This document shows positions 11,089 through 48,480 of a stretch of 64,000 bases of DNA, one piece after another. Made by a program: the position numbers and the translations under genes. Location of the stretch: positions 186,001 through 250,000 of IMG/VR virus record IMGVR_UViG_3300034104_003795. One strand, given 5' to 3'. The notes under the pieces are model-generated. The model saw only the letters and a list, made by a program, of their open reading frames with translations. It was not told the DNA's origin and searched no databases. How positions within the stretch are numbered: the first letter of the stretch is position 1; the number at the start of each line of letters is the position of its first letter.

Positions 11089-14000
11089 TTAACTAAAATT
11101 TTTACCACTTACAAATCCATAATATGTAGTACCACCATCATAAGTATAGAATACTAAAATATCAGTTCCAACAGAAGTTAGTGTTGGTGCACTTCCACCC
11201 GCCCAATCAACATTTACTGGCCAAGTTATTGTGTATGCTCCCGCATTTACAGTAACTAATGTAAATCCAAATGCGTTTGAAGCAGGTGCGTTACTAAATG
11301 CAACACTCGCATTACCATTAAATTGTCTTCTGAAGTTGTTACCAGTTGAAAGGTCTAATGTTACACTTCCACCGGTTCCTTGGTCAGAATATGTTTCTCT
11401 AAATGTATTTGCCGCAATAGATGTTGTTGATATTACATTACCAGTTACAGTTAATGTACTACCATTAAATGTTAAATTTGATTCAACATTTGCTCCAAAT
11501 GCAACAGCGTTGTAAGTTAATATACCATCTTCGGTATTACCAGATAATGGGAAACCAGATGTACCAGATGTACCCGATGTAAATCCAGGTGCAGATGTAC
11601 CAGATGTACCACTTTGTCCGGATGTACCAGATGTAAATCCTGGAGGTGTTGTACCAGATGTACCGGCTGTGCCACTTATTCCAGAAGTTCCTGATGTTCC
11701 AGATGTGAAGCCAGGAGGAGTTGTACCCGATGTACCAGCAGTACCACTTTCTCCAGAACTACCCGATGTACCGGATGTGAAGCCCGGAGGCGTTGTACCC
11801 GATGTACCAGATGTACCAGTTTCACCAGATGTTCCCGATGTAAAGCCCGGAGGTGTTGTACCCGATGTACCAGATGTTCCTGCTTCACCGGTTGCGTTTG
11901 TACCATCTTTACCAGATGTACCACTACTACCAAAATATGTTCCATCAAATCCAGAAGTTCCAGATGTACCATTCGTACCTAATCCAGAAGTTCCAGATGA
12001 GCCACTCACACCAGATGTACCAGATACTCCAGAAGTACCACTACTTCCAAATAACGTACCATCTTTACCAGATGAACCAGATGTACCCGTAGTTCCACTC
12101 ACACCAGATGTGCCGCTTTCTCCAGATGTACCAGAAGTACCACTTATACCCGATGTTCCAGATGAACCGAAATAAGTTCCATCAAATCCGGAAGAACCAG
12201 ATGTACCAGATGACCCGGATGTACCCGATGTGCCACTTTGTCCAGATGTACCTGCAGTTCCACTTTCTCCAGAAGTTCCTGATGAACCAAAGAATGTTCC
12301 ATCTTTACCAGAAGTTCCAGATGAACCAGAAGAACCCGCGCTACCGTCAGTTCCACTTATTCCAGAACTACCCGATGTGCCGCTTTCTCCAGATGAACCA
12401 GAAGTTCCAGATGAACCAAAGTATGTTCCATCTTTACCAGAACTACCCGATGTACCACTTACACCAGAAGTACCACCCGTTCCTGCACTTCCCGATGAGC
12501 CAGTTGAACCAGATGAACCCGATGTGCCACTACTACCTGATGTTCCAGAAGAACCAAAGAAAGTTCCATCTTTACCAGATGTACCACTTTCACCAGATGT
12601 ACCAGAAGAACCAGATGTACCATCGGAACCTGATGTACCCGATGTGCCACTTTCTCCAGAAGTACCAGAAGAACCAGATGAACCTTCTGCCGAAGTACCA
12701 GATGAACCAGATGAGCCTCCGGTGCCACTAGTACCACTTTCACCAGAAGTACCACTACTTCCAGAACTTCCTGCTGAACCACTTTCTCCAGATGTACCTG
12801 ATGTACCATGAGAACCAAAGAATGTTCCGTCTAAACCAGATGTACCCGAAGTACCATCTTGTCCAGATGAGCCAGATGAACCACTACTTCCTGATGTACC
12901 CGAAGTGCCATCTTGTCCAGATGTACCAGAAGAACCAAAGAATGTTCCATCTTTTCCACTTGTTCCAGAAGTACCATCGGTACCCGATATACCAGATGAA
13001 CCAGATGAGCCGCTACTTCCTGATGTACCCGTTGTACCAGAACTTCCAAAGAATGTTCCATCCAATCCGCTTGTACCGGATGTGCCGCTTTCACCAGATG
13101 TTCCAGATGTTCCTGTTTCACCGGATGTACCATCGGTACCAGATGTGCCAGTTGAACCCGAACTACCACTACTTCCAAAGAATGTTCCATCTACACCACT
13201 TGTTCCAGAAGAACCAGAAGTGCCAGATGTTGCTGATGTTCCAGAACTACCAGATGACCCGGATGTTCCCGAACTTCCAAAATATGTTCCATCTAAACCA
13301 GAACTTCCTGATGTACCAGATGAGCCACTGCTTCCAGAACTACCAGATGAACCACTACTTCCACTGCTTCCAGAAGTTGCAGATGTACCGGATGAACCAG
13401 AACTTCCAGATGTACCAAATGAACCATCGGTACCAGAACTACCCGATGAACCTGCAGTACCAGTTGAACCAGATGTACCTGAAGTGCCATCTGCTCCTGA
13501 ACTTCCACTACTTCCACTGCTTCCAGATGAACCAGATGAGCCAGTTGTACCAGATGAACCACTACTTCCACTTGAACCACTACTTCCAGATGTGCCATCA
13601 GTACCAGATGTACCAGATGAGCCACTACTTCCAGATGTTCCATCAGAACCAGTTGTACCAGATGAGCCACTGCTTCCAGATGAACCAGATGAACCGGCAC
13701 TACCACTACTTCCTGAACTTCCACTTGAACCAGAGCTACCAGATGTACCTGCAGAGCCGTTCGTACCAGAAGTTCCTGCCGAACCAGATGAACCACTACT
13801 TCCAGAAGTTCCTGATGAACCATCTTCTCCGGATGTACCAGAGCTTCCCGATGTACCAGATGAACCTGCTGAACCAGTTGTACCAGAACTACCAGAAGTA
13901 CCAGTTGTACCAGATGAACCACCACTACCATCGGAACCAGATGACCCGGATGTTCCAGAGCTTCCCGATGTTCCTGCTGAACCAGCACTACCAGATGAGC

Positions 14001-17000
14001 CAGAGGTTCCTGATGTACCAGATGAACCCGCAGTACCACCAGTACCAGAAGATGCCGATGTACCACTACTTCCCGATGTGCCTCCACTACCAGATGAACC
14101 AGAAGTTCCAGATGTGCCGCTTGTGCCAGAGGTTCCAGAACTTCCTGATGTGCCGGCAGTACCGCCACTACCAGATGATGCGGATGTACCACTACTACCC
14201 GATGTACCAGAGGTTCCAGAGCTACCAGATGTTCCCGATGACCCGGATGTTCCAGATGAACCAGAACTTCCAGATGAACCAGATGTACCAGAAGTACCAG
14301 AAGTTCCTGCAGAACCAGTTGAACCAGAGCTACCAGATGAACCACCACTTCCAGATGAACCGGATGTACCACTACTACCAGATGTTCCTGAACTACCCGA
14401 TGAACCAGATGTGCCAGATGTGCCACTGCTTCCCGAAGTTCCCGATGAACCAGATGAACCGGATGTTCCAGATGAACCAGAACTACCATCTGAACCGGAA
14501 GTACCAGATGTGCCGCTCGTGCCGCTACTACCCGATGTTCCAGAAGAACCAGATGAACCAGATGTTCCACTACTTCCAGAACTACCAGATGAGCCTGAAC
14601 TTCCAGATGAACCAGAACTTCCAGATGTTCCTGTTGTTCCAGAACTTCCACTGCTTCCTGAACTACCAGATGAACCAGATGAACCATCTATACCAGAACT
14701 TCCACTACTTCCCGAACTACCAGATGAACCGGAACTTCCAGATGTACCAGATGTTCCCGTTAATCCGGATGAACCAGAAGAACCAGATGAACCACCTGTT
14801 CCAGATGAACCAACCGCAGCTGCTACGTTTCTATATCCTAATTTTTTAGTTATTGGGTCCCACGTTACAACCTCATCATATGATGCCGATACGATTCCAC
14901 CAAGCATTATACTACCACTAACACCTAAACTTCCACTAATTGTAAGTGATGCGTTTATTGTTTGATTTGTATTGATGTTTAAGAATGAAGATGTGTCAGT
15001 ATTTGCAGAATTAAGTGCAAATGAAGCAGTTAATGCGTTTACAGAATAAGAAATACTATCCATTCCTAACGGCCCATCTACACCGGTTGATAATATATAA
15101 GATGCCGTAAGTGAAGTTTGAGCCGCTCCACCGTTGATTGTTACTAATACGCCATCAGAACCAGATGAAATCACATCTACCCCAGAACCACTAAAGTTTA
15201 TCTTTGCAGTTTGAGATTTTACCAACGAACTGGTATGATAAATAAATAATTCAGTTCCACCACCACCACCGTTTAATGCAAAAGATGCGGTTAATGCGTA
15301 AGAAGAACTTACAGCACTAAACACTGCCATTGATGATGTTTGATTGTTTCTCACATATTGTGATGAATCTCCCAATGAAGCCGATAATGATGCAAGTGAT
15401 GCTGAATCAAATCCTTGAACGGATACAGCAACTTCAGCTCTACGTGCATATGATGCAGAAAGAACTTCACCAAATACTCTATCACCAGGAATTGTACCAT
15501 TAATCAATGAGCCACCACTACCAATCACAACATGTCCGGAAGTTAATCCAGCAAATTTAATTTGGATTGTATCTTCATCAATTGATTTAACAGTGCCAGG
15601 TATAATTTGGTCTTCCGAACCAGTTGCGTACACTTGAACCATAGGATATAAAATTCCTAAGTTGTGTACAATTGTCAAATCGCTTACATTACTAAACGAT
15701 ACAGTTTCAGTTAATGATGTTTCAGGTTGAGGTACAAAATATCCTCTATCTTCATCATATCGTAAAATATCGTATTCAGCACTTGCAGTAGGTCCTACTC
15801 CTTGAAAATTATATGTACCCAAGAACGAACCACTAATAGTTGGTGCAAATATTGTACCACTTGCAGATATGTTATGTGCAGTTATATCATATACAACATC
15901 CAAATCACCATCTATTGATGCCGATGTACTTACTCTGAATCCTAAATCAGGAGATATTTCAGCGAATACAGATCCGGATTTTAATATAGCCGTTTCAAAT
16001 GCTAAATTAGCAATATTGATATTTCTTAATCCACTACCATCACCAACATATCTACTACCGGATTGAAGTACAACATCAGAACCAGTTACAAATATTCCAC
16101 CACTCACTGCTAATGAACCAGAGAATATTCTAACGGATGTATTTATTTCCAATCCTTTGTTTGGAGAAATTACAGCTTCAACAGATCCAGATATAATTCT
16201 ATCTAATTGTAAATCTTCTAATGCTTCGGCAGGGATATTAAATAATCCACTACCATCACCATCGTATCTTGCTGCCGTAATTGGTACGTTTACATCTAAT
16301 TTAGTTGGGTCAATAATTGCTACACCAGAACCAGAGTTAATTTTAGCCAACTCTAAGTTTTCAATCGCATCAGGTGGGATGTTAAATAATCCACCACCAT
16401 CTCCAATAAATAAAGATGCAGTTAATGAACCGGTAATTGATACCGAACCGGTGAATTGTGAACCACTACTAGCATTTACTATAAACTTATCACCACTAGC
16501 TACCGATGCCGTTGCCGAACCACTTGCTATCAATGGAGCTGCGGCTGCTTGTACATTTGTTAAAAATCTACCATCACCAAATACAAATCCTCTTGCAGTT
16601 AAATCATCTGCGGTCAATGAACCACTAATAGAAACACTACCAGTAAATTGAGAACCAATGTCAGAACCAGTTGCAGCGGTTCTTACAATAAAATTATTAC
16701 CACTTTGTACCGATGCAGTTGCAGAACCACTTGCTATTAAAGGTGCAGCTGTTGCTACTACATTGGTAATAAATCTACCGTCCCCAAACAAGAAATCCGT
16801 TGCTCTGATGCTTCCACTAACTTCAATTGAACCGGTGAATTGAGAACCAATTTGAGAACCGGTTGCCGCCGTTGTTATTATAAATACATTACCACTTTGT
16901 ACCGATGCAGTTGCAGAACCACTTGCTATCAATGGAGCTGCGGCCGCTACTACGTTTGTAATAAATCTACCATCTCCAAATAAGAATTCAGTTGCTCTGA

Positions 17001-20000
17001 TACTTCCACTAACTTCAACCGAGCCAGTGAATTGAGAACCAACTAGCCCACCGGTAAATGGAGTTATTACTCTAAATCCATCAACTGGACTTACTGATGC
17101 GGTTACTGAACCGGATTTGATTTCGGTAGATATTAATGCATCTTCGGTTAATGCGGAACGAGGGATATTTCGTAGATAAGTACCTTCTCCATAATATGAA
17201 GAACCGGAACTTAAAAATAAACCACCACTTGCAATCTCATTAATATATAAACTTCCACTTATATCTACCGAACCAGTAAACCTAGACCCAATTTGTGTAT
17301 CAAATATCAAATTTGGATTACCATCTACTATATTTATAACACCCGCCATTGATGAATGGAATTGGCAATTATAATATAACGTATTTGGTGCACTTCCAGA
17401 AACCAAGAATGTTATTTGTCCAACATCTTCACCATTATTAGTAACCCAACTATTATAAAAATTAGTATCACCAGTACCAGATGTTTCATTAATCCAAAAT
17501 GGATGCCCACTTGCATTTATATTAAAAATATATTCATAATTTCTATGCAATGTAATTGTGGGATTTGAACCACTTGCTGCTCCGCTAAATACATACTCAC
17601 CACTTCCATTATTTATTACATTAAATACGTTATCAAATACTAAAGAAGATGTAAATGGTGTTTTAACTTTAAAACCATCAACTGGACTTACCGAAGCCGT
17701 TACTGAACCAGATTTAATTTCTGCAGATATTAATGCATCTTCAGTTAATGCAGAACGTGGTATATCAAATAACAATCTACCAGATGAACTGATAAATGAA
17801 CCACTCGCCATAAAGATGCTTCCACTAAATGTAGAACCACTACTTACCGATTGAACTAAAAATCCAAATTCAGGAGTTACCGATGCAGTGATACTACCAG
17901 TTGCAATACGGAATACTTCTTCCGATAATGCGGAACGAGGTATATCAAATAATCCTTTACCACTACCACTAAACATTGAAGATGAAACAGGTCCAGATGT
18001 ATTTAAACTACCTGTAATTTGTGTATTTCCTATGAATGTTATTTCAGGTGCTATTTCTAAAAAATCAACTATATTAAGTTGCCCTACCATTGATGAATGC
18101 AATTGGCAATTGTAATATAGAATATTAGGTGAACCAGAATACGGAGTGAATACAATATCCCCACTATCATCACCATTATTCGTAATACTTTGACTTACAT
18201 TATTAGATGTACCGGTTGAATTTATAAATTTAATCCATAAAGGATGTCCTACTGCATTAACATTAAATGTATATTCTACACCTCTTACCAATGTTAATGT
18301 TGGATTTGAACCGGATATTAATCCATTACTTACAACATATGCACTACTCCCATCGTTTGTTACATATATTGTGTTATCTATTAATTCGGTAGGCAATGGT
18401 CTTGCCGAAGATGATACTACAAAACTACCATCAATTCTAGAATGAACATTTACTTCAAATCCGTTGTTAGGTGAAATAGATGCCGTTGCACTACCACTAA
18501 AGATTTTTGTTGAATCAATTGCTAAATTAGCTAATGTAATATTATTAAGGAATCTACCATCACCAATAAAATAAGAACCACTTGTTGAAGTTACATCACC
18601 TCTTACTAAAAGGCTTCCAGTTATATCAACGCTTCCGGTAAATTCAGAACCACTATCCGCAGATTGTACTCTAAAACCAAATACAGGTGAAACTGATGCA
18701 GTTACACTACCACTTGCTATTTTATTTGGAGCAAATGATAAAGCCGATTCAGGTATATCAAATAAATTTCTACCAGAACCACTAAACGATGAACCACTTT
18801 GTAGTTCTATATTTCCATGTGCAAATACACTACCACTTATATTAATTGAGCCGGTAAATTGAGAACCCAACAAAGTAGATTCAACAATAAATCCAAAATC
18901 AGGCAATGCCGAAGCGGTTACCGAACCAGATGCAATTCTAAATATTTCTTGAGATAATGCTGAGAATGGTATATCGGTTAATCCAGCACCACTACCACTA
19001 AATACCGATGCAGAAACACCTGATTTAAATAATGATGATTGATTTACTTTTAAAGAACCAGTTACAACTAAATTAGATTTTATATCAGTTGAACCCGTTA
19101 CAATTAAATAATCTCTAACGGTTACACCGGTATTTACTAAAAACCCTTTATCAGGAGAAATAGATGCTGTTGCTGAGCCACTAAAGATTTTAGAAGTATC
19201 TAAATCAGATAATGCCGCTACAGGTATATCAAATAATTTTTTACCACTACCACTAAAAGACGAACCAGTTATTACTCTTACCTCTCCATAAAATGTAGAA
19301 CCACTTTCTATTGAAGTTACTACGAATCCTTGATTTGGAGCCACCGAAGCGGTTACACTACCACTAACAATTTTCTCACTAAATAATGCATCAGGAGCAA
19401 GTGCTGTTCTCGGTATATTAAATAATCTTTCTCCACTACCACTAAAAGATGAGCCAGATGATATTTCTACACTTCCACTTACTAATATTGATGATGAAAA
19501 TTCTGCTCTATTAGCCCCTTCTAATCTAAATCCATATACAGGAGAAACAGATGCAGTTACAGATCCAGATACAATTCTCGTTCCTTCTATTGATGGTACA
19601 TTTCTTAATCTACTACCATCACCTTCAAAAGAACCGCTAAATTCAGGTGAAAATATTCTTTCCGCAGTAAGTGAACCAGATACTCTAACACTACCGGTTA
19701 TATCACTACCTCTTTGTAAAGATTCAACTCTAAATCCATAATCAGGAGAAACCGATGCAGTTACACTACCACTTGCAATTCTATATGCATCACCGGTAAA
19801 TGCCGATTGCGGAATATCAAATAATCCTCTACCACTACCAGAGAAGAATGAACCACTTCCTAAAAATACGCTACCACTTACCCCTAAACTTCCTGTTATA
19901 TTAGTTTTTCCAATAAATGTAATTTCGGCAGGTATTTCAATTGCATTCACAACATTGATAGCCCCTTGCATTGCACTATGAAACTGACAAGTGTAGTATA

Positions 20001-22278
20001 AATTACTAGGTGTTAATTCATCTAAACTAAATATAATAGTTCCACTATCAGTTCCATTATTCGTAACACCAGTGTTGTATGCACCATCCGTTCCGGTTTG
20101 AATACTTCCAGATTTTATCCAAAACGGATGCCCACTTGCATTTATATTAAAGGTATATGTAACACCTCTTACTAATGTTAATGTTGGATTTGATGCACTT
20201 ATTGCGTTACTAAACACATATGCACTAAATCCATTATTTGTTACATCAAATACGGTGTTTAACGATTGACTTGGAATTGCATAGTTTGAAGATGAAACAA
20301 TCATACTTCCACTAAACTTACTATAAACGTTTACATTAAATCCCTTTACCGGGTCAATAGATGCGGTTGCAGAACCAGAGAAAATTAAATTAACATCTAA
20401 ATTAGAAATAGCTGAACGAGGAATATTAAATAACTTCTCACCACTACCACTAAAGAATGAACCAGATGATAAGAAAACACTACCACTAAAAGTAGAACCA
20501 CTTGCAACTGATTTTACAACGAATCCATCCACATCGGTTACAGATGCAGTTACACTACCACTTGCAATTAAATTTGAAATCAATGCATCGGGTGCTAAAG
20601 CTGTTCTAGGGATGTTAAATAATCTTTCACCACTACCACTAAACGATGAACCAGAAGTTAGTGATATATTACCACTTACAATTAAAGAACCGGTAAATTG
20701 AGAACCACTATCCGGTGATATTACTCTAAATCCTTCATCAGGACTAACAGATGCGGTTACACTACCACTTGCTATACGAAATACTTCTTCAGATAACGCA
20801 GAACGAGGAATATCAAATAACCCTCTACCACTACCACTAAATTGAGATGCCGAAACCGAACCAGTTACTACTAAATAACCCGCTATTGTAGCAGATGTAT
20901 TAACTTCTAATCCCTTATCAGGTGATATTGATGCGGTTGCAGAACCACTTGCAATTCTAGGTGCAACAAGAGATGGTACGTTTGTTAATTTACTACCATC
21001 GCCCACAAAGAAAGATGCGGTTACGGCACCATTGACGTTTACCGAACCACTTATATCAACACTTCCGGTAAATTGTGAACCCCTATCTACAGATTCTACT
21101 CTAAATCCAAAATTAGGTGAAACAGATGCAGTTACACTACCACTTGCAATTCTAAAAGGTGCAAAAGAAAGTGCGGATTCTGGAATATCAAATAGAAATC
21201 TACCAGAACCACTAAAGAATGAACCGGATGCTAATTTTATACTACCAGTAAATTCAGAACCATTTGCTTCCGATTCAACCCTAAATCCAAATACAGGAGA
21301 AACGGATGCCGTTACCGAACCGCTTGCTAATTTTGTAGCTTCGGGTAAATTAAATAGGCCTTTACCATCTCCAGAGAATGAACCAGTAAATGAGCCTGTT
21401 GCAGAAGATGCAGTAAATTGATTTATAGTGGCCGTTAATGAAAATATAGAACCAGATTCTACTATAACGGATCCAGTAGTTAAACGTAAACTACCTGTAA
21501 TTTGCACACCACCTAAAAATGATGCACTTTGTGCGTTTATTATTAAAATATCACCAAGAACCGATGCTGTCACCGAGCCACTTGCTAATATTGCAGATTC
21601 AATTGCAGATTGTACATTTCTTAAATCTCTACCGTCTCCAAAAAATGAGCCCGTAAATGATGAAGATATTGAAGAACCGGTTGCTTCATTAAATCTTAAA
21701 TAATTTCCAATTTCAACCGAACCTGTAAATTCTTGTTTATCACTTAATTCATCACCAAATTTATTTGAACCAGATGAATATATTACAGATGATGAAATTA
21801 TACTAACAACTAATTGTTCAGCATATATTGATTTTGATACATATAAATTTTCTGCAATTGTTGTATCAACATTTATTTGTAATCCAAAATTAGGAGAAAT
21901 TGATGCAGTTGCAGAACCACTAGCTAAACGTATTGTGTCAGGTAAATTAAATAAACCAGCACCATCGCCAAAATAAGAACCAGAGAATGAACCAGTATAA
22001 GAACCCGTAAAACTACCACTTAATGATTCAGCACTACCAGTAAAAGAACCTGTAAATTGTCCCGTTACTCTATCTAAATCTAAACTTCTTACGAATCCTC
22101 TATTACCTTGGTCATCTGAAACTACAATAGCTGGTGAACCAGAAAGTGAAGCACTAAAATTTGGAACACCCAAATTTGGTTCAACTTGAGATAAATCAAT
22201 AAATTGATACCTGTCTTGTGTTACGTTTTTTGGGGATACTACCCTTACCCTACCTGATAATAGATTACTAATTGCCAT
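11089..22278 (-). CDS. Giant virion appendage protein (3729 aa): about 24 SGS-rich repeats, three cupredoxin-like domains, about 1090-aa Gly-X-Y Ser/Thr tract, C-terminal fibre domain
   Basis: ORF track. Repeats xIxSGS(V/A)TAS(V/I)SP..G; three GHP(F/L)W...LYY.CQ.HS.M domains; C-terminal TITWPVNVDWAGGSAPTLT...DILVF typical of phage tail proteins. Confidence 0.85.
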   Translation of the reverse strand: MAISNLLSGRVRVVSPKNVTQDRYQFIDLSQVEPNLGVPNFSASLSGSPAIVVSDDQGNRGFVRSLDLDRVTGQFTGSFTGSAESLSGSFTGSYTGSFSGSYFGDGAGLFNLPDTIRLASGSATASISPNFGLQINVDTTIAENLYVSKSIYAEQLVVSIISSSVIYSSGSNKFGDELSDKQEFTGSVEIGNYLRFNEATGSSISSSFTGSFFGDGRDLRNVQSAIESAILASGSVTASVLGDILIINAQSASFLGGVQITGSLRLTTGSVIVESGSIFSLTATINQFTASSATGSFTGSFSGDGKGLFNLPEATKLASGSVTASVSPVFGFRVESEANGSEFTGSIKLASGSFFSGSGRFLFDIPESALSFAPFRIASGSVTASVSPNFGFRVESVDRGSQFTGSVDISGSVNVNGAVTASFFVGDGSKLTNVPSLVAPRIASGSATASISPDKGLEVNTSATIAGYLVVTGSVSASQFSGSGRGLFDIPRSALSEEVFRIASGSVTASVSPDEGFRVISPDSGSQFTGSLIVSGNISLTSGSSFSGSGERLFNIPRTALAPDALISNLIASGSVTASVTDVDGFVVKSVASGSTFSGSVFLSSGSFFSGSGEKLFNIPRSAISNLDVNLIFSGSATASIDPVKGFNVNVYSKFSGSMIVSSSNYAIPSQSLNTVFDVTNNGFSAYVFSNAISASNPTLTLVRGVTYTFNINASGHPFWIKSGSIQTGTDGAYNTGVTNNGTDSGTIIFSLDELTPSNLYYTCQFHSAMQGAINVVNAIEIPAEITFIGKTNITGSLGVSGSVFLGSGSFFSGSGRGLFDIPQSAFTGDAYRIASGSVTASVSPDYGFRVESLQRGSDITGSVRVSGSLTAERIFSPEFSGSFEGDGSRLRNVPSIEGTRIVSGSVTASVSPVYGFRLEGANRAEFSSSILVSGSVEISSGSSFSGSGERLFNIPRTALAPDALFSEKIVSGSVTASVAPNQGFVVTSIESGSTFYGEVRVITGSSFSGSGKKLFDIPVAALSDLDTSKIFSGSATASISPDKGFLVNTGVTVRDYLIVTGSTDIKSNLVVTGSLKVNQSSLFKSGVSASVFSGSGAGLTDIPFSALSQEIFRIASGSVTASALPDFGFIVESTLLGSQFTGSINISGSVFAHGNIELQSGSSFSGSGRNLFDIPESALSFAPNKIASGSVTASVSPVFGFRVQSADSGSEFTGSVDITGSLLVRGDVTSTSGSYFIGDGRFLNNITLANLAIDSTKIFSGSATASISPNNGFEVNVHSRIDGSFVVSSSARPLPTELIDNTIYVTNDGSSAYVVSNGLISGSNPTLTLVRGVEYTFNVNAVGHPLWIKFINSTGTSNNVSQSITNNGDDSGDIVFTPYSGSPNILYYNCQLHSSMVGQLNIVDFLEIAPEITFIGNTQITGSLNTSGPVSSSMFSGSGKGLFDIPRSALSEEVFRIATGSITASVTPEFGFLVQSVSSGSTFSGSIFMASGSFISSSGRLLFDIPRSALTEDALISAEIKSGSVTASVSPVDGFKVKTPFTSSLVFDNVFNVINNGSGEYVFSGAASGSNPTITLHRNYEYIFNINASGHPFWINETSGTGDTNFYNSWVTNNGEDVGQITFLVSGSAPNTLYYNCQFHSSMAGVINIVDGNPNLIFDTQIGSRFTGSVDISGSLYINEIASGGLFLSSGSSYYGEGTYLRNIPRSALTEDALISTEIKSGSVTASVSPVDGFRVITPFTGGLVGSQFTGSVEVSGSIRATEFLFGDGRFITNVVAAAAPLIASGSATASVQSGNVFIITTAATGSQIGSQFTGSIEVSGSIRATDFLFGDGRFITNVVATAAPLIASGSATASVQSGNNFIVRTAATGSDIGSQFTGSVSISGSLTADDLTARGFVFGDGRFLTNVQAAAAPLIASGSATASVASGDKFIVNASSGSQFTGSVSITGSLTASLFIGDGGGLFNIPPDAIENLELAKINSGSGVAIIDPTKLDVNVPITAARYDGDGSGLFNIPAEALEDLQLDRIISGSVEAVISPNKGLEINTSVRIFSGSLAVSGGIFVTGSDVVLQSGSRYVGDGSGLRNINIANLAFETAILKSGSVFAEISPDLGFRVSTSASIDGDLDVVYDITAHNISASGTIFAPTISGSFLGTYNFQGVGPTASAEYDILRYDEDRGYFVPQPETSLTETVSFSNVSDLTIVHNLGILYPMVQVYATGSEDQIIPGTVKSIDEDTIQIKFAGLTSGHVVIGSGGSLINGTIPGDRVFGEVLSASYARRAEVAVSVQGFDSASLASLSASLGDSSQYVRNNQTSSMAVFSAVSSSYALTASFALNGGGGGTELFIYHTSSLVKSQTAKINFSGSGVDVISSGSDGVLVTINGGAAQTSLTASYILSTGVDGPLGMDSISYSVNALTASFALNSANTDTSSFLNINTNQTINASLTISGSLGVSGSIMLGGIVSASYDEVVTWDPITKKLGYRNVAAAVGSSGTGGSSGSSGSSGLTGTSGTSGSSGSSGSSGSSGSSGIDGSSGSSGSSGSSGSSGTTGTSGSSGSSGSSGSSGSSGSSGTSGSSGSSGTSGSSGTSGTSGTSGSDGSSGSSGTSGSSGSSGTSGSSGTSGTSGSSGSSGTSGSSGTSGSSGSGGSSGSSGSTGSAGTSGTSGTSGSSGSSGSSGTSGSSGTSGSSGTSGTSGSSGTSASSGSGGTAGTSGSSGTSGTSGTSGTSGSSGSGGTSGSSGTSASSGTGGTAGSSGTSGTSGSSGSAGSAGTSGSSGTSGSSGSDGSGGSSGTTGTSGSSGTTGSAGSSGTSGSSGTSGEDGSSGTSGSSGSSGSAGTSGTNGSAGTSGSSGSSGSSGSSGSAGSSGSSGSSGSSGTTGSDGTSGSSGSSGTSGTDGTSGSSGSSGSSGSSGTTGSSGSSGSSGSSGSSGADGTSGTSGSTGTAGSSGSSGTDGSFGTSGSSGSSGTSATSGSSGSSGSSGSSGSSGSSGTSGSSGLDGTYFGSSGTSGSSGSSGTSATSGTSGSSGTSGVDGTFFGSSGSSGSTGTSGTDGTSGETGTSGTSGESGTSGTSGLDGTFFGSSGTTGTSGSSGSSGSSGISGTDGTSGTSGKDGTFFGSSGTSGQDGTSGTSGSSGSSGSSGQDGTSGTSGLDGTFFGSHGTSGTSGESGSAGSSGSSGTSGESGTSGTGGSSGSSGTSAEGSSGSSGTSGESGTSGTSGSDGTSGSSGTSGESGTSGKDGTFFGSSGTSGSSGTSGSSGSTGSSGSAGTGGTSGVSGTSGSSGKDGTYFGSSGTSGSSGESGTSGSSGISGTDGSAGSSGSSGTSGKDGTFFGSSGTSGESGTAGTSGQSGTSGTSGSSGTSGSSGFDGTYFGSSGTSGISGTSGTSGESGTSGVSGTTGTSGSSGKDGTLFGSSGTSGVSGTSGVSGSSGTSGLGTNGTSGTSGFDGTYFGSSGTSGKDGTNATGEAGTSGTSGTTPPGFTSGTSGETGTSGTSGTTPPGFTSGTSGSSGESGTAGTSGTTPPGFTSGTSGTSGISGTAGTSGTTPPGFTSGTSGQSGTSGTSAPGFTSGTSGTSGFPLSGNTEDGILTYNAVAFGANVESNLTFNGSTLTVTGNVISTTSIAANTFRETYSDQGTGGSVTLDLSTGNNFRRQFNGNASVAFSNAPASNAFGFTLVTVNAGAYTITWPVNVDWAGGSAPTLTSVGTDILVFYTYDGGTTYYGFVSGKNFS
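11550..14815 (-). repeat. Coding (G-S-S/G-T-S)n tract of about 1090 codons with DGT(F/Y)FG and TTPPGF punctuation
   Basis: Direct reading of the 3729-aa translation and the 9-bp periodic DNA. Confidence 0.93.
15900..21960 (-). repeat. About 24 copies of a 60-70-aa repeat (F.G.G.GL.DIP.SAL....IASGSVTASVSP..GF.V.S...GS.FTGS)
   Basis: Counted by eye on the SGS(V/A)TAS core in the translation; some copies are near-identical at DNA level (e.g. 16700-16740 vs 16890-16930). Confidence 0.85.
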
Positions 22279-23288: not shown

Positions 23289-26200
23289 TTATATTTGTAG
23301 TGCCAATGAGAACGGAGTTACTAATGAGAATAGAGATTTACTAAATGTTCTACCCACAAGAGTACCAGTTGCTTGATTAATACTTAGGCCAGTACCAATT
23401 CTAAAGTCACCATCTTGGTTACCGGAAGTGAAGAATATTCTACCACCACCCAATTCGGTAATTTCAAACGCCGGATTTGCCACACCACTACCACCCTGAT
23501 TTGGAGGAAGTGCTTTAAACGTCACACCACTACCATTATAAGAGTAGTCAATACCAGTTGCCACAATCAATGAACCAAATGCTTCTAATGGTGCACCCGC
23601 TGCTATAAACTCTGCTCTTGTTCTTAAATATCTATTAGTTTCAAGAGTTTCTAATAACTGGTCTCTAGTCACTGCAATTGCACTTCCATATTGACCATCG
23701 TAGTATGAAGATGCTGCTCTAATTCCTCTCTCATTTCCACCATATAATAAGTCAGTAACACACGCATCTACAATAAATCCAGTATCACGTGAACAACTAG
23801 CCTCATTATATACTAAATATGGAAATGCTCCATTTGTATATCCAATTGCTCGTTGTTTTAATTCTTCCTTACCAAGTTTTAATCTTTCTGCCGCCTGTCT
23901 TCTTTTAGTTGATGGTGCTAAATAACTTAATAAAGTATTTGCAACTATCTTTTCAGAAAGTCCTCTTGCGAAGTTAATACCATCTACCGTTTGTTTCTTT
24001 TGTCCATTATTATCACCATAACTATCCACTATTGCTACTGATGGGAATTTATAATAGTAAGAACCCGCTTCAATACTTCTTTCATTACCACCATACACTA
24101 AGTCAGTTCTAATTGCATCTATAATAAACCCTAAATCTCTAGAACAACTTACTTCGTTATATTTCAAATTACTCCAAGAAGAACTTAAGAATGTTATAGT
24201 TTCCTTTTGTATCAATTCTTTATTATCTGTCAACAATTTAGCGGTTGTTAGTAAAGATGCCGAAGGTACTAAATATGTTGGATTGGTTATTACCTTTTTA
24301 GATACCTTTCCAGCGTATCTGATACCAGTAAGCGTTGGGTCTAATTGGTTTTTAGTTGATGGAACACCTGCGTTAATAGCGTTAGAAGGATATAAGTAAT
24401 AATACTGTCCTGCTATCAAACTTCTTTCTTGTCCACCATAAAGTACATCAGTTGCCGCTGCATCTATTAGGTATCCAACATCTCTCTTACAAGTAGTTTC
24501 ATTGTAATATACACTACTCCAAGATGAAGATACATATTTAATTGTTTCTTCTGCTACAAATGCTTTATTCTTTCTTAATAGGTCAAATGATGCAGATGCC
24601 TCTAATGATGCAGTTACAAATACTATGTTTTGCGCAACTTTTTGTGCCAATCTACTTGCGTAGTTTATACCATCAACTGTTTGTCCTAATTGACCAAGTC
24701 CATCACCATCTCCTTCAACAATTGCTAAAGATGGATATAGATAATAGAACTCTCCATTCAATACAGTTCTCTCATTACCACCATATAATAAATCGGTAGT
24801 AACACCATCTAATATATAGCCAACATCTCTCTTACATTTATCTTTATCATACTCAAATGTACTCCAGCTAGCAGTTAAGTAAGCTAGGGTTTCATTTTGT
24901 ATAAACTCTCTGTTATTTCTTAACAAATTAACCGATGCTGATATTATTTGTGATGCAGTTACATAAGTTAATGATGTAGCTACATTTTTAGAAGTTTGTC
25001 CTGCGTAATTAACACCAGTTAATGTTGGTTGTAATTGTGAACCTTGTGCTTGAGATGGATATAAGTAATAGAACACCCCAGCATTTGTACTTCTTTCATT
25101 ACCACCATATAATAAATCGGTAGAAACTGCATCTATGATATGTCCAACATCTCTCTTACAAGTTACCTCATCATAAGATGCTGTGCTCCAAGAAGAAGAT
25201 ATGTACGCGATAGTTTCGTTTTGAATAAACTCTCTATTGTTTCGTATCAATTCGTATGATGCTGATACATTTGCCGATGCGGTTACATAAGTTACATTTT
25301 GTACTATATTTTGTGCCAAACGGCTAGCATAGTTAATACCATCCAATGTTTGGTTTAGTTGTGCACCTTGTGCTTGAGATGGATATAAGTAATAGAACAC
25401 TCCATTGAATATTGATGCGGAATTTGCATTAAATAATAAGTCTTCGGCAGAACCACTCAATATAAACCCTAAATCACGTCTACATTTACTCTCGTCATAA
25501 GATGCGGTTGACCAAGATGAACTCAAATATGCAATACTTTCCGATACTATGAATCCAATATTTGCTTTTAATAAATTATATGCGTATATTACATTAGTAT
25601 CAACGGATGCAGTTGTATATGGAATTAAAGTTGGTAATGAACCAGTACCATTTCTTACTATATCTGTTACAATAGAAATAGATGCCGATATTGCATTAGC
25701 TTCGGTAATAGTTCCAAATAACGATGATGTTATAAATTGTTGAGCGTTGGTTACTTTAATATTTGCTAACGTATTAGGTATAACAGAAGGTGTCCCTATC
25801 AATATACTACTAATAGATGCCGTTGTTATTCTAGCTGCGTACTTAATTGCCTCTACCGTTTCTACAACTTGCGAACCAGACCCATTAGCTTGAGATGGGA
25901 ATTCATAATAGTAATCTGCATTCTTTCTACTTCTTTCATTTCCACCATAAAGTAAATCAGTTGCCACACCATCGATAATATATCCTAAATCTCTATAACA
26001 TTTACTTTCACTATAATCTAAATTAGGGTATTTAACATTTACAAATGCGATACTTTCACTTTGTATGAATCGTTTGTTAGCCTTTATTAAATCATAAGTA
26101 TATTGAACTTCTAATGATGATGTAAATATCTCTTTATTAACAACTACATTCATAGCTGTTCCTTTTGCGTATCTTACACCAGTTAATGTTGGTTCTAATT

Positions 26201-29200
26201 GTGAATCGGTAGCTTGTGATGGGAAATCATAATAATATCTTCCAGCTACAACACTTCTTTCGTTTCCGCCATATAAAAGGTCAGTTGCTACTGCATCTAT
26301 AATGTATCCAATATCTCTTTTACAAGTTATTTCATTATAATCAAAATCACCCCAAGAAGAAGATAGATACGCAATTGATTCACTTTGTATAAATCCTTTG
26401 TTAGCTCTTAATGAATTCCAAGATGCTGATGTTGGTTGGTTAATTGATGCCGATATGTGTGTAAACGGAATGTTCAACACCACCTTCTCTGCCAATCCAC
26501 TTGCGTATTTAATTGCAGTGATTGTTTGGTCTAATTGTGAACCAGTTGCTTGTGATGGGAAATCAAAATAGAACTTACCATTAAACAATGATGCCGAATT
26601 ACCACCATATAAAAGGTCAAATGCAGAACCACTAAGGATTCCAGTCAAATCTCTTTCACATTTACTTTGTGTATATTCAAACCCACTCCAAGATGAACTC
26701 ATATACGCAATAGTTTCATCAACTATAAATTTAGAGTTACTTACTAATAAGTTATATGCTGAATTTATCTTTGCATTTGTATTTGCTATCGGGAATGTTG
26801 ATGGTCTATATGCAATTGAGCTCGTACCATTATTTAATAACACATCGATTACTAATGATAATGATGCTGATATCAATTTACCTTGCAATCTTCCTGCCGC
26901 ACTTCCACTTATTAATTGTGGAGTATCAGTTACTTTAATACTTGCAGATGTATTTGATACAATTGTTGGCAGAACTGATGTTCCATTTTCAATTACATTT
27001 AGTATCAAATCAAATCCACTTGCAATCTTATTAGTATCAAACGATGATGCGGATATGTCTTGTCTTATAGGATTTGCATTTGTTACTTTTAATGATGAAG
27101 ATGTACTTGCTACTAATGTAGGTAATACACTTACTCCATTTTTAAGAACGTCTACAACAGTACCATAAGAAGAACTTACATTTGTAATTTGAATTGCCAA
27201 ATCATATGAACCAGTTCCAATTATTTGTTCTTGTGAACTTATATGTAATAAAGTTGGTGTAGATAATTCAAATCCATAATTATAGTTTCTTGCCAATGAA
27301 TCCGGTACAAATGCAACACCATTTTCAATAATATCAGCCACATGCTTAAATGATGATGTGATAATATCCAATTCAGCTCCACTTGCCGATATTGATGATG
27401 AGTATTGAGTAGTATTAGTTATTTTGATTAAACCATTGCCATTTTCAACGATAGTTGGTATTGTAGATAATCCATTTTCAATAATATTAGTAACTAACGC
27501 AAATGATGAACTAATTTGATTTACTTCGTTTATACTTGCACTCAACGGTGTTGTATATTGTGTTGTATCAGTTACTTTAATATTTCCATCGGTATTTGTT
27601 GTTAATGCCGGTGAATTTAATTTAATATTTTGTGCTATTGCTTTAGCTAATACTTTAGCGTATTCAACACCTTCCACAGTTTCTCTAACTTGCGTACTCT
27701 TTGTTGCTAAAGATGGATATAAATAATAATATTGTCCAGCTATAACACTTCTTTGATTTCCACCGTAGAAAGTATCAGTTATAACTGCATCTAAAATATA
27801 TCCTACATCACGTCTACATTTTTCTCTTAAATAAACTAAATTAGGGAAGAATGCATCTATGTATTGTACAGTTTCGTTTTGTATAAATCTTTTGTTCTGT
27901 CTTAATAAATTAACCGATGATGTTACAAATCCAGTTGGTGCTATCAATACTTTATTTGATATTACATTTTGTGCAGTACCAGCTACATATTGTATTCCAT
28001 CAAGTGTAGGTCCTTTTTGAGTTTCGGTAGTTGGTGAAATAGAACCAGTCAGAATTGCTGCAGATGGGTATAGATAATAGTACTCACCTGCTTTAGAACT
28101 TCTTTCGTTTCCACCATATAAAAGGTCAGTTCTTACTGCATCTATAATATATCCAATATCTCTCTTACAAGTAGTTTCGTTATAAGAGAATCCATCATCA
28201 CCACTCCAAGACGAAGATAAGTAAGCGATTGATTCACTTTGTATAAACTTCTTATTATCCGTTAATAAATTAAATCCAGTTAATTCAGATGTTGTTGGAG
28301 ATTGTAATAATATATTTGCTACAATCTTTTCAGTAATTCCTTTAGCGTATTTAATACCATCTAAAGTTTGATTCAATTGTCCACCGGTATCACCATCGTT
28401 ACCTACGGTTGCCAATGAAGGATATAAGTAATAATACTCTCCTGCCTCAGCCACTCTTTCGTTTCCACCGTAAAGAATATCAGTTGCTACTGCGTCTAAT
28501 ATATAACCAATATCTCTCTTACAAGTAGTTTGGTTATAAGGGAATGTACTCCAAGAAGAAGATAGATATGCAATAGTTTCATCTTGTATAAATGATTTAT
28601 TATTGAATATCAATTCGTATGCTGAAAGATTTGAATTAGATGCTGATGCAAATGTTGAATTCTTTAATATCTTATCAGTTAAACCTTTCGCATGTTTGAT
28701 TCCACTTAATGTTGCCCCTAATTGAGATGTTGTTGCTTGTGATGGATATTCATAATAGAATACACCGGCATTTATACTTCTCTGATTACCGCCATAAACT
28801 ATATCGGTTGTTACCGCGTCTAAAATATGGCCCACATCTCTCTTACAAGTTAATTCATTGTAAGATGTTGTACTCCAACTAGCAGATACATAACTTATAA
28901 CTTCGTTTTGTATAAATTCTCTATTATTATAAATTAATTCTTTTGCTTGTAATTTATTTTGAGATACTTTAGTAAATGTATTTCCTCTTAAAATTTTGAA
29001 TGCAATATCTCTAGCATATTCAATACCAGTAACAGTCTCTTGTATTTGTGAACCAGTTGCTTCAGATGGGTATTTATAATAGAATACTCCAGCATTTATT
29101 GTTCTTTCATTTCCACCATATAATAAGTCAGTAGAAACTGCATCTATAATATGTACTATATCTCTTTTACAAGTTGATTCAACGTATTGATGTGTACTCC

Positions 29201-47156: not shown

Positions 47157-48476
47157 TTAGAAAAGATAAATATAAGATGGGTGTTTATCATCTTTTAGTT
47201 TTTGACGGATTCTTTCATCCGAACACCCAAAATGTTCTCCGGCCTCTTTAAGAGAGCAGAATTGAATTCCTTCACACTCAATTATTGGAAGGTGTATTTT
47301 TATTTTTGAACGTAATTGTAATTCGTTCATTTCATCGTAACTGATATCATTACGTTCAACTTTTTTCCAATGACGATATACTGGATTATTTGATTCAAAG
47401 TAGTTTCTAGCTTCTGATTCTGATATTCCTAATTTATCCGCCACCTGTTTTGGGTTCTCAAAAGGAACTCCATCTATTTCGTATTTAATTGTTGGATTAG
47501 TTTCTTCACCAATGATTTGCCAATCTTTGTATTTTGATTTAGTAGAACGGCATCTTCTTTCAACTTCACTTGCCACCAATTCATTTGGATTAATATCAAT
47601 CGCAGCTTCTCTAAAACTTCTATAAGATTTACCATCAACCACACATTTAAACGTATCACCGTTTACAATAGATTCGGTTGCAATATCAGGATTGCCTTTT
47701 ACGAATACCAATATGTTTTGATGAACCGATGCCACTTTGCGATTTCTTTCAAAGTATGTATCAACAACTCTTGATGCTTGGTGTTGTGAATTAAATAGAA
47801 TCATATCGTTGTAGAAATGTAATCCAGCTTCTTCACAAGCTCTAATCGTTTTCCAGACCAAACCTTTATACTTTCCAATCTTATAATTTCCTGTGGTTGA
47901 TTGTTCTCTTACTTCCGATACAACTACTGCAAAGAAACGATTATCTTTTAGTTTTTCTGCAGCTTTTCTTAAAATGGAATAATATTTTTTATCAAACGAA
48001 TCCTCATCCATATTTGAAAGGTCAGCCGGATTATCGGTATATTTCTCTAAATCATAATAAGGTGGACAAGTAAACACAAAATCCTGAGTTTTGTTTTGTA
48101 TTGAATCGATTACCCATTCACTATCGCCTTGTATCCAATTTGGTTTTGTAGATTGTTTTTTGTTTGCTTCAATTTGTTCATCAGAAAGGTCTATACCGTT
48201 ATAGATGTATCCCATTTCAGTTGCAACTATACCTCTAACACTACCACCTGCAAATGGGTCCAATACTCTACCTTCCTCTGGACAAAACCATTCATACATC
48301 TTTTCACAAAGTGTAGCATCAAATATGGAAACGGTATTATCTTCCCAAAAACGGGCTCTACTTTGGGTATTTTCCCTACCCAATTCTGATTGGATATTGT
48401 AGGTGTTAATCCACCATCTTTTACGTTCTTGCCATTCTTTAGAACGAGTATCTAAAATAGAGAAAGGTTTAATCAT
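47157..48476 (-). CDS. DNA amino-methyltransferase (N6-A/N4-C type) fused to three NUMOD1-like HTH modules
   Basis: Motif I LDPFAGGS and motif IV FTCPPYY. C-terminal CVVDGKSYRSFREAA, YEIDGVPFENPKQVADKLGI, IECEGIQFCSLKEAGEHFG. Start moved from 48491 to the ATG at 48476 because the track's extension overlaps the promoter. Confidence 0.85.
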   Translation of the reverse strand: MIKPFSILDTRSKEWQERKRWWINTYNIQSELGRENTQSRARFWEDNTVSIFDATLCEKMYEWFCPEEGRVLDPFAGGSVRGIVATEMGYIYNGIDLSDEQIEANKKQSTKPNWIQGDSEWVIDSIQNKTQDFVFTCPPYYDLEKYTDNPADLSNMDEDSFDKKYYSILRKAAEKLKDNRFFAVVVSEVREQSTTGNYKIGKYKGLVWKTIRACEEAGLHFYNDMILFNSQHQASRVVDTYFERNRKVASVHQNILVFVKGNPDIATESIVNGDTFKCVVDGKSYRSFREAAIDINPNELVASEVERRCRSTKSKYKDWQIIGEETNPTIKYEIDGVPFENPKQVADKLGISESEARNYFESNNPVYRHWKKVERNDISYDEMNELQLRSKIKIHLPIIECEGIQFCSLKEAGEHFGCSDERIRQKLKDDKHPSYIYLF

Positions 48477-48480
48477 AACA

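What the first reader, a model, noticed from the sequence alone, without database searches (positions are those of the whole stretch)
17320..20250. Three cupredoxin-like domains with a complete amicyanin-type copper ligand set in a virion fibre
Seen: domains at about 19945-20250, 18060-18375 and 17320-17630 each have an upstream His (GHPFW/GHPLW) and a C-x2-H-x2-M loop (CQFHSAM, CQLHSSM, CQFHSSM). Known: His...C-x2-H-x2-M is the type-1 blue-copper ligand spacing of amicyanin. A fourth homologue in the 4184-aa protein (about 33680-33990) has lost the ligands (EYPFW...VSQNRSSM). Retention in all three copies here therefore suggests selection for metal binding. Inference: the virion carries redox-active or copper-binding modules, perhaps for targeting, metal piracy or oxidative protection.
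Basis: partly seen in the sequence, partly recalled or inferred. Interest (0 to 1): 0.7.

Follow-up and report, generated by a model that had tools for sequence, protein, structure and literature searches.

The report
Blue-copper-type domains in a phage fibre
A giant fibre protein of a freshwater jumbo phage carries three cupredoxin-fold domains that keep the complete His-Cys-His-Met set of a blue-copper site, and the same module sits in hundreds of aquatic phage tail proteins, so many virions probably display metal (likely copper) centres whose role nobody has tested.

Summary
ORF A (11089-22278, minus strand, 3729 aa) holds three ~115-aa homologous domains. Each has an upstream His and a C-x2-H-x2-M loop, and these are the only three Cys in the protein. 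A fourth copy in ORF B has lost His, Cys and His.

An AlphaFold2 model (pLDDT 93.9) is a cupredoxin: VIA-align Z 11 to the type-1 copper domain of a nitrite reductase and Z 10 to rusticyanin.

The family is very large (6,143 clusters at 50% identity). It includes secreted 143-aa bacterial proteins and tail, baseplate and fibre proteins of 325 phage records, almost all cyanophages (P-SSM2, P-GSP1, S-CAM8).

The ligands are among the best-conserved columns, and they are lost all together or not at all: 194 of 232 copies keep all four, 26 keep one or none, and only 12 are in between. In related phage fibres, 61 of 63 distinct copies keep all four.

Selection for an intact metal site is therefore well supported. 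Copper itself, ligand geometry and any redox role remain untested. The most likely reading is a metal-locked knob displayed on a trimeric, collagen-tailed fibre. I found no paper describing this, although pipelines already label fragments "plastocyanin".

The parts
11089..22278 (-). ORF A, a 3729-aa giant fibre protein with no signal peptide. It is 23% Ser and 18% Gly and has only 3 Cys.
   Evidence: Pfam Collagen E 1.6e-99
19924..20277 (-). Cupredoxin domain D1 (aa 668-785). Ligand codons: His717 20128-20130, Cys764 19987-19989, His767 19978-19980, Met770 19969-19971.
   Evidence: AF2 model pLDDT 93.9; Foldseek and VIA-align matches to cupredoxins; phrog_677 E 1.7e-24
18043..18393 (-). Cupredoxin domain D2 (aa 1296-1412). 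Ligand codons: His1345 18244-18246, Cys1391 18106-18108, His1394 18097-18099, Met1397 18088-18090.
17299..17652 (-). Cupredoxin domain D3 (aa 1543-1660). Ligand codons: His1592 17503-17505, Cys1638 17365-17367, His1641 17356-17358, Met1644 17347-17349.
15952..21921 (-). Fibre shaft region: 23 copies of a ~60-70-aa repeat marked by SGSVTASV-like motifs. Each of the three cupredoxin domains sits in an enlarged (~200-aa) gap between two repeats.
   Evidence: motif positions and spacings 60-72 aa, against 199-202 aa at the three insertions
11647..14811 (-). Collagen-like region, aa 2490-3544: 324 G-X-Y triplets in 19 runs. This implies a homotrimer.
11092..11646 (-). C-terminal globular domain of ORF A, similar to the C-termini of tail-fibre and virion structural proteins.
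   Evidence: phrog_19200 E 1.3e-12, phrog_7760 E 4.9e-11, phrog_9017 E 5.9e-10
33654..34022 (-). D4, a ligand-less homologue in ORF B (aa 608-730): Tyr662, Ser710, Arg713, with Met716 kept.
23289..35843 (-). ORF B, a 4184-aa second giant fibre-like protein. Its N- and C-terminal parts match tail-fibre PHROGs.

Best explanation
ORF A is a homotrimeric virion fibre. It has a long shaft of ~65-aa repeats, about 1,050 residues of collagen triple helix and a tail-fibre-type C-terminal domain.

Three times along the shaft, each chain loops out a ~115-aa cupredoxin domain. Each domain keeps an intact type-1 ('blue') copper ligand set: one His before strand 5, Cys at the end of strand 7, and His and Met in a short C-x2-H-x2-M loop before strand 8. 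A fibre would therefore display nine such sites.

The domain belongs to a very large aquatic family. Its cellular members are small secreted proteins of the plastocyanin/amicyanin type. Its viral members are modules of tail fibres, gp9-type baseplate proteins and tail-associated peptidases.

Shown here: the fold, the placement of the ligands in sequence and secondary structure, the family, the fibre context, and strong purifying selection on the His-Cys-His triad as a unit.

Inferred:
- Each domain binds one metal ion. Copper is the most likely, because this ligand set and loop are specific to type-1 copper sites.
- The bound metal protects the lone thiol and rigidifies the domain in oxic water.
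- Both chain ends of a cupredoxin lie at the pole opposite the metal site (this rests on my own knowledge of plastocyanin topology). The metal pole, with its exposed His, should therefore point away from the fibre axis, where it can touch a cell surface.
- I take the working role to be a metal-locked, outward-facing knob for adhesion or stability, not catalysis.
For: Fold:
- The AF2 model has pLDDT 93.9, pTM 0.86 and eight strands.
- All 27 Foldseek PDB matches with E <= 0.001 are cupredoxins: rusticyanin, AcoP, three-domain nitrite reductase, and pseudoazurin carrying the amicyanin loop.
- VIA-align gives Z 11.0 to residues 24-140 of 2dv6 (98 aa, rmsd 2.9, 24% identity) and Z 10.2 to rusticyanin (rmsd 2.3).

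Ligand register:
- The model ends at residue 110 against rusticyanin residue 155. That puts Met103 on Met148, which PDB entry titles name as a mutated site.
- A profile search of PDB sequences aligns YYnCqfHssMaG with YICSIHPYMKG and YICTLHPWMKG of the tethered cupredoxin domains in 6hbe and 9cck.

Family size and range:
- 6,143 clusters at E <= 1e-3.
- 325 phage records, almost all cyanophages.
- P-SSM2 gp028, P-GSP1 gp35 and the S-CAM8 gp9-like protein all keep H/C/H/M.
- Secreted 143-aa bacterial members exist, and one lies next to a cytochrome c-like gene.

Selection:
- All four ligand columns are at least 90% conserved in the 104-sequence alignment.
- Of 232 complete copies, 194 are HCHM, 26 keep one ligand or none, and 12 keep two or three. 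Independent loss would predict 77 copies with three ligands and 1.3 with one or none.
- At least 5-14 separate switches are needed on a tree built without the ligand columns.
- In orthologous giant fibres from IMG/VR, 61 of 63 distinct copies are HCHM. Median pairwise identity there is 58%, and all four ligand columns are among the 23 of 118 columns that are at least 95% conserved.
- The axial variants seen (Met to Phe x5, to Gln x1) are ones I know from laccases and stellacyanin.

Fibre context.
Against: - No metal was measured.
- No coordinates were available, so ligand distances were not checked.
- The domains fail Pfam Copper-bind: no hit at E <= 1 for D1-D3, none in the genome, and only 1 of 104 family members matches.
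- Phage structural proteins fold in the cytoplasm, where free copper is scarce. From my own knowledge, recombinant cupredoxins made in the cytoplasm often pick up zinc or stay empty.
- I found no copper chaperone-like gene in the phage genome (a crude motif scan only).
- The axial Met is also kept in copies that lost the site, so its conservation says nothing about copper.
- That ORF A is in the virion rests on homology only.
- The adhesion/stability role is inference, with no direct support.
Confidence: 0.6

Rival explanations
1. Redox-active virion. The copper centres cycle between Cu(I) and Cu(II) and exchange electrons with a host surface component or with oxygen species, for recognition, triggering or protection.
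For: - The ligand set and loop are those of electron-transfer cupredoxins.
- Cellular relatives look like periplasmic carriers, and one lies beside a cytochrome c-like gene.
- The nearest Pfam family (PF25489) is found in eukaryotic DOMON/cytochrome b561 proteins.
Against: - A lone type-1 site has no catalytic chemistry, and no partner is identified.
- I saw no other redox domain in ORF A.
- The module turns up in very different tail proteins (gp9-like, collagen fibres, S8 peptidase, C1q). That pattern fits a generic structural or adhesive module better.
Confidence: 0.12
2. The site is a structural metal site filled by zinc, or is often empty, in real virions. The triad is conserved because any bound metal, or the ligand network itself, stabilises the domain. 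Copper is not the physiological ion.
For: - Assembly is cytoplasmic and there is no signal peptide.
- No copper-handling genes were seen.
- The all-or-none pattern shows selection for a site, not for a particular metal.
Against: - His2-Cys-Met in a cupredoxin loop is not a usual zinc site (my own knowledge).
- The closest cellular relatives are secreted, as copper proteins are.
- The axial Phe and Gln variants are typical of copper sites.
Confidence: 0.22
3. The ligands are a vestige. The domain is only a beta-sandwich spacer or adhesin, and H/C/H/M persist through shared ancestry or packing needs, without metal binding.
For: - D4 and about 11% of copies do without the triad, so the fold does not need it.
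- Met is kept even in ligand-less copies.
Against: - Neutral decay would give many partial sites, but only 12 of 232 are partial against 77 or more expected.
- The copies are old (dS about 1).
- Orthologues at 41-58% identity keep all four ligands.
- A lone, strictly conserved Cys in an extracellular protein that has no other Cys is hard to explain otherwise.
Confidence: 0.05

Closest known systems
Amicyanin (type-1 copper protein of methylotrophs)
   Same: Cupredoxin fold, a His...Cys-x2-His-x2-Met ligand set, and the shortest natural loop spacing. A pseudoazurin carrying the amicyanin loop (2ux6) is among the Foldseek matches.
   Different: No amicyanin chain appears in the PDB sequence searches at E <= 10. 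The domain here is embedded in a 3729-aa fibre, not a free periplasmic carrier. The His-to-Cys distance is 46-47 residues, as in plastocyanin (47) and unlike amicyanin (39); these reference numbers are from my own knowledge.
Rusticyanin and the N-terminal type-1 copper domain of Hyphomicrobium denitrificans nitrite reductase (2dv6)
   Same: These are the best structural matches (Z 10-11, rmsd 2.3-2.9 over 95-98 residues, 21-24% identity), with the last strand in the same register.
   Different: Rusticyanin's loop is C-x4-H-x4-M. Both are redox proteins or enzyme domains with known partners.
C-terminal tethered cupredoxin domains of copper nitrite reductases 6hbe and 9cck
   Same: These are the best sequence-profile matches in the PDB. 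They have the same C-x2-H-x2-M-x-G loop aligned residue for residue.
   Different: The similarity is weak (E 0.006-0.007) and limited to the C-terminal third. They feed electrons to a catalytic copper site in the same enzyme.
C-terminal domain of cyanophage gp9-type 'baseplate wedge tail fibre connector' (phrog_677), P-SSM2 gp028 and P-GSP1 gp35
   Same: The same domain family (phrog_677 E 1.7e-24; tblastn 37-55% identity) with the same four ligands. BFVD models match at TM about 0.8.
   Different: Those proteins have one copy per protein and different partner domains. They come from marine cyanophages, whereas this phage is from lake water, has no psbA, and carries three copies in one fibre.
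Pfam PF25489 At5g54830-like domain (plant CYBDOM protein, Drosophila Skeletor)
   Same: This is the nearest Pfam model by sequence: 31 of 104 family members at E <= 0.01, best 7e-8. The AlphaFold models of Skeletor residues 544-730 and At5g54830 residues 386-510 match at TM 0.63-0.67.
   Different: D1-D3 score 14-24 bits, below the 27-bit cut-off. I could not check whether the eukaryotic domain keeps copper ligands.
Phage-encoded plastocyanin (petE) auxiliary metabolic gene
   Same: A cupredoxin with a type-1 site encoded by aquatic phages (PMC2984593).
   Different: petE is a free photosynthetic electron carrier acting inside the host. This domain is part of virion proteins and does not match PF00127. 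JGI nevertheless names fragments of this family 'plastocyanin'.
Metal ions in phage fibres (T4 gp37 iron, gp12 zinc) - my own knowledge, not tested here
   Same: Metal ions built into tail fibres for stability.
   Different: Those ions sit on the threefold axis between chains and are bound by His only. Here each chain would carry its own intradomain His-Cys-His-Met site.

Membership tests
Cupredoxin superfamily / type-1 blue copper proteins | Eight-stranded Greek-key beta-sandwich (cupredoxin fold) | tested here: met
   AF2 pLDDT 93.9 with 8 strands; Foldseek probability 1.00 to rusticyanin, AcoP, NiR, plastocyanin and azurin; VIA-align Z 11.0 and 10.2
Cupredoxin superfamily / type-1 blue copper proteins | One upstream His plus Cys-xn-His-xm-Met in the loop between the last two strands | tested here: met
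   H50 lies before strand 52-55, C97 ends strand 92-97, and H100 and M103 precede strand 104-110. The loop aligns with the copper loop of 6hbe and 9cck. Register with rusticyanin Met148.
Cupredoxin superfamily / type-1 blue copper proteins | Four ligand atoms converge within bonding distance of one point in 3D | not testable with these tools
   Structure prediction returns no coordinates. The complex-prediction job with a metal was not folded and is not evidence either way.
Cupredoxin superfamily / type-1 blue copper proteins | Binds copper, with a ~600 nm charge-transfer band and a small parallel hyperfine EPR splitting | not testable with these tools
   Needs protein chemistry
Pfam PF00127 Copper-bind (plastocyanin/azurin family) | HMM score above the gathering cut-off (21.2 bits) | tested here: not met
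   No hit at E <= 1 for D1-D4; none in the whole genome; 1 of 104 family members at E 1.5e-4. Related Atlas clusters carry PF00127 in 10-46% of members.
Amicyanin | C-x2-H-x2-M loop | tested here: met
   CQFHSAM, CQLHSSM and CQFHSSM
Amicyanin | Detectable sequence homology to amicyanin; a free secreted ~105-aa protein | tested here: not met
   No amicyanin chain in the PDB sequence searches at E <= 10. The domain is internal to a 3729-aa protein without a signal peptide.
Pfam PF25489 At5g54830-like domain | HMM score above 27 bits | tested here: inconclusive
   D1 22 bits (24 in the whole protein), D2 14.5, D4 14.4, D3 no hit. 31 of 104 relatives at E <= 0.01, best 7e-8.
phrog_677 baseplate wedge tail fibre connector (gp9-like) | Match to the C-terminal ~110 residues of the profile | tested here: met
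   E 1.7e-24, profile positions 302-411 of 412
phrog_677 baseplate wedge tail fibre connector (gp9-like) | T4 gp9/gp10 N-terminal domain (PF07880) | tested here: not met
   No PF07880 hit in ORF A or ORF B. Only the module is shared, not the protein.
Collagen-like phage tail fibre | Collagen triple-helix repeats plus a tail-fibre-type C-terminal domain, encoded in the structural module | tested here: met
   PF01391 E 1.6e-99; 324 G-X-Y triplets; tail-fibre PHROGs at the C-terminus; neighbours are major capsid protein, portal, terminase, adaptor and a gp15-like protein
Collagen-like phage tail fibre | Protein physically present in virions | not testable with these tools
   Uncultured phage; needs virion proteomics

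The most novel reading that the evidence does not exclude
Type-1 copper centres are a common working part of aquatic phage tails. They would sit on the gp9-type baseplate protein of marine T4-like cyanophages, on T7-like cyanophage fibres and on freshwater jumbo-phage fibres. The copper would be needed for host recognition or for triggering infection, through its redox state or through copper-dependent binding. Trace-metal availability would then directly control phage infectivity in lakes and oceans.
Probability: 0.13. Interest if true: 0.85.

Novelty: new variant of a known kind. Interest (0 to 1): 0.6.

Why it matters
- Cupredoxins are known as electron carriers and enzyme domains. I found no account of them as parts of virus particles in ten full-text searches.
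- If the sites are metal-loaded, many abundant aquatic phages, including model cyanophages that can be grown, carry metal centres on their host-recognition apparatus. Trace-metal chemistry would then be linked to phage stability or adsorption.
- The idea is directly testable with existing isolates.
- There is also a practical point. Annotation pipelines call fragments of this structural module 'plastocyanin', which can inflate counts of photosynthetic auxiliary genes in viromes.

Tried and rejected
- Megablast of the region against phage genomes found no match.
- A single-domain phmmer search and the 4-sequence profile against PDB gave only noise. The 104-sequence profile was needed.
- NCBIfam gave nothing for the domain.
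- The search for related loci with the 104-sequence alignment failed for lack of a conserved stretch. The 4-sequence alignment found only 15 genome loci because its patterns were narrow, so that result does not show the family's range.
It gives no evidence either way.
- I hoped read laying on four lake metagenomes would show natural variation at the ligand codons. The repeats fragment the contigs, and only 40 of 325 variant sites are listed. None of those 40 hits a ligand codon, but this is inconclusive.
- Host inference failed. There is no psbA. The nearest capsid proteins are from an uncultured jumbo phage, Flavobacterium phage immuto and Microcystis phage Mel-JY01. The host stays unknown.
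- A motif scan for an MxCxxC copper chaperone in the genome found nothing convincing.
- Ten literature searches found no description of cupredoxin domains in phage structural proteins (papers checked).
- I did not model D4 separately. A model driven by the same alignment would not be an independent test.
Full report
**What is there**

The window is bases 186001-250000 of a 273,997-bp virus record that CheckV rates complete. The genome is 33% G+C and carries 26 tRNA genes and a tmRNA gene. The sequence recurs in 18 lake-water or freshwater DNA runs from 2020-2024 and, in part, in two metatranscriptomes.

Nearly all genes in the window lie on the minus strand and form a structural module:
- terminase, portal, major capsid protein and a head-tail adaptor-like protein;
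- a 1386-aa collagen-like tail fibre and a gp15-like tail sheath stabiliser;
- two giant ORFs: ORF B (23289-35843, 4184 aa) and ORF A (11089-22278, 3729 aa).

The capsid protein is 52-55% identical to those of an uncultured jumbo phage, Flavobacterium phage immuto and Microcystis phage Mel-JY01. The genome has no psbA. The host is unknown.

ORF A contains three homologous ~115-aa domains:
- D1, aa 668-785, window 19924-20277;
- D2, aa 1296-1412, window 18043-18393;
- D3, aa 1543-1660, window 17299-17652.

Each has GHP[FL]W followed 46-47 residues later by C-Q-[FL]-H-S-[AS]-M. These three Cys are the only Cys in 3729 residues, and six of the 14 His are ligand His.

ORF B has a fourth copy, D4 (aa 608-730, window 33654-34022). 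In D4 the three strong ligands are replaced by Tyr, Ser and Arg, while Met remains.

A profile of the four copies finds exactly these four places in the genome, at E 3e-61 to 4e-54. The copies are old, with pairwise dS 0.67-1.08 and dN 0.38-0.49. Retention is therefore not due to recent duplication. Within this one gene, though, the statistical argument is modest (about 0.025).

**Fold**

I built an alignment of 104 family members and used it for an AlphaFold2 model of D1. The model has mean pLDDT 93.9, pTM 0.86 and eight beta strands.
- Every Foldseek PDB match with E <= 0.001 is a cupredoxin: rusticyanin, AcoP, the three-domain nitrite reductase of Hyphomicrobium, pseudoazurin with an engineered amicyanin loop, plastocyanin, azurin and multicopper oxidases.
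- VIA-align gives Z 11.0 to residues 24-140 of 2dv6, which is its N-terminal type-1 copper domain (98 residues, rmsd 2.9 Å, 24% identity).
- It gives Z 10.2 to rusticyanin (96 residues, rmsd 2.3 Å).

**Ligand placement**

In the model, His50 (D1 numbering) precedes strand 52-55. Cys97 ends strand 92-97. His100 and Met103 lie in the short loop before the last strand, 104-110. This is the canonical cupredoxin arrangement.

The structural alignment ends at model residue 110 against rusticyanin residue 155. That puts Met103 on Met148.

A profile search of PDB sequences gives only weak hits (best E 0.006), but nearly all are cupredoxins. The top two alignments lay Y-x-C-x2-H-x2-M-x-G on the copper loop of the tethered cupredoxin domains of nitrite reductases 6hbe and 9cck.

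I could not measure ligand distances, because no tool returns coordinates. A co-folding job with a metal was not run by the tool and is not evidence.

**Family**

The profile finds 6,143 clusters (at 50% identity) with E <= 1e-3, and 3,099 with E <= 1e-10.

Among phage genomes, 325 records match, almost all of them cyanophages. The cultured examples I checked keep all four ligands:
- the P-SSM2 'tail fiber-like protein' gp028;
- the N-terminus of P-GSP1 gp35, the gene next to its tail-fibre gene;
- the C-terminus of the gp9-type baseplate wedge / tail-fibre connector of S-CAM8.

D1 matches the C-terminal part of phrog_677, 'baseplate wedge tail fiber protein connector', at E 1.7e-24.

Predicted-structure libraries show the same module in several kinds of viral protein:
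- proteins with collagen, T4 gp9/10 N-terminal, S8 peptidase, C1q, Calx-beta and Phage_fiber_2 domains;
- giant-virus 'beta-sandwich proteins'.

The module also occurs in cellular proteins that UniProt names 'Blue (type 1) copper domain-containing protein' or 'Plastocyanin'.

Short stand-alone members are common, and JGI names several of them 'plastocyanin'. The 143-aa members have signal peptides and lie on bacterial contigs. One of them, on a 1.4-Mb contig, lies next to a gene with a weak cytochrome c match.

By sequence the family is not Pfam Copper-bind. D1-D4 have no hit at E <= 1, and only 1 of 104 members matches. The nearest Pfam model is PF25489, the At5g54830-like domain of eukaryotic DOMON/cytochrome b561 proteins. 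D1 scores below its threshold, while 31 of 104 relatives match at E <= 0.01. The AlphaFold models of Skeletor and At5g54830 match well.

**Selection on the site**

- In the 104-sequence alignment, all four ligand columns are at least 90% conserved.
- Among 249 domain copies in the 150 best representatives, H, C, H and M are present in 212, 207, 206 and 225 copies. Cys occurs almost nowhere else in the domain.
- Loss is all or none. Of 232 copies with all four columns filled, 194 are HCHM, 26 keep one ligand or none (usually only Met, as in D4), and just 12 keep two or three. Independent loss would predict about 77 copies with three ligands and 1.3 with one or none.
- On trees built without the ligand columns, at least 5 changes of state (98 rows) or 14 (206 rows) are needed. 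The trees are poorly resolved, so these counts are rough.
- A scan of IMG/VR found 274 relatives of the repeat-domain-repeat segment. The 78 fetched loci include orthologous giant fibres of 3,500-4,550 aa with one to three copies at similar positions.
- In those loci, 61 of 63 distinct domain sequences are HCHM, at a median pairwise identity of 58%. All four ligands are among the 23 of 118 columns that are at least 95% conserved.

Together this shows that the His-Cys-His triad is kept as a functional unit in most copies and is dropped as a unit in a minority. That is what a metal site predicts.

**Architecture and likely working**

- ORF A has 23 copies of a ~60-70-aa repeat between aa 120 and 2101. 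The three cupredoxin domains sit in three enlarged gaps of ~200 aa.
- A collagen-like region follows, with 324 G-X-Y triplets (aa 2490-3544; Pfam Collagen E 1.6e-99).
- The protein ends in a C-terminal domain like those of tail-fibre proteins.
- Collagen implies a trimer, so a fibre would display nine sites.
- From my knowledge of cupredoxin topology, both chain ends lie at the pole opposite the metal site. An inserted domain should therefore present its metal pole outward.

My best reading is a metal-locked knob that stabilises the fibre, helps it adhere to surfaces, or both.

Copper is the most likely ion on chemical grounds. Assembly in the cytoplasm, however, makes zinc or a delayed loading after lysis a serious alternative. 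I found no support for a redox task.

**Novelty**

Ten full-text searches and two papers gave no description of cupredoxin domains in phage structural proteins; only the free plastocyanin gene petE is discussed. Automatic annotation has already tagged some relatives. The domain kind is therefore known, but its use in virions appears undescribed and untested.

Noticed in passing
window 23769-33473 (ORF B aa 791-4017): ORF B holds 22 copies of a ~108-117-aa repeat. Each has exactly one Cys, in a C-x-R-D-x-G-x-I motif. The repeats come in blocks of 3-6 separated by spacers of about 385 aa. 22 of the protein's 27 Cys are these. No Pfam family matches.
   Followed up: partly
window 12792-14965, + strand: Two long + strand ORFs (685 and 686 aa) lie antisense to the collagen G-X-Y region of ORF A. 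They are almost certainly artefacts of the repeat composition, not genes.
   Followed up: no
G000:C1:85230-92009 and 171074-171460 (outside the window): The phage genome has a cluster of 26 tRNA genes and a tmRNA gene (tag peptide ending ...ADLAVAA).
   Followed up: no
window 47157-48491: A DNA methyltransferase-like gene (phrog_498 E 2e-62) sits inside the head/tail structural module, between the capsid and portal genes.
   Followed up: no
window 57395-60343 and 60755-61507: A 982-aa protein with a cytidylyltransferase-like domain and DUF5661, and a PfkB-family sugar kinase, lie next to the terminase. These may be nucleotide-sugar genes of the phage.
   Followed up: no
proteins P0059, P0163, P0172, P0176 and others: JGI names many short metagenomic fragments of this structural module 'plastocyanin'. 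Counts of the petE auxiliary gene in viromes may include such fragments.
   Followed up: partly
L023:6001-6832: A secreted 143-aa bacterial member of the family (P0255, full ligand set, 49% identical to D1) lies directly upstream of a gene with a weak cytochrome c match on a 1.4-Mb contig. This context fits a periplasmic electron carrier.
   Followed up: partly
P0225 and BFVD hits: A 121-aa stand-alone member lies on a 160-kb contig with RNA polymerase subunit, AAA ATPase and topoisomerase II genes, which looks like a giant virus. Marseillevirus and Pithovirus 'beta-sandwich proteins' also match the model.
   Followed up: no
window 17299-20277: Lake metagenome contigs laid on the region show many joints between the fibre repeats, and diverged variants (85-95% alike). 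This suggests a swarm of related phages whose fibre repeats recombine or mis-assemble.
   Followed up: no
L027-L104: Orthologous giant fibres in related IMG/VR contigs carry one, two or three cupredoxin copies at similar positions (about aa 650-775, 1215-1426 and 1531-1549). Copy number therefore varies between close relatives. Some loci are cut by the 10-kb flank, so the counts are minimums.
   Followed up: partly
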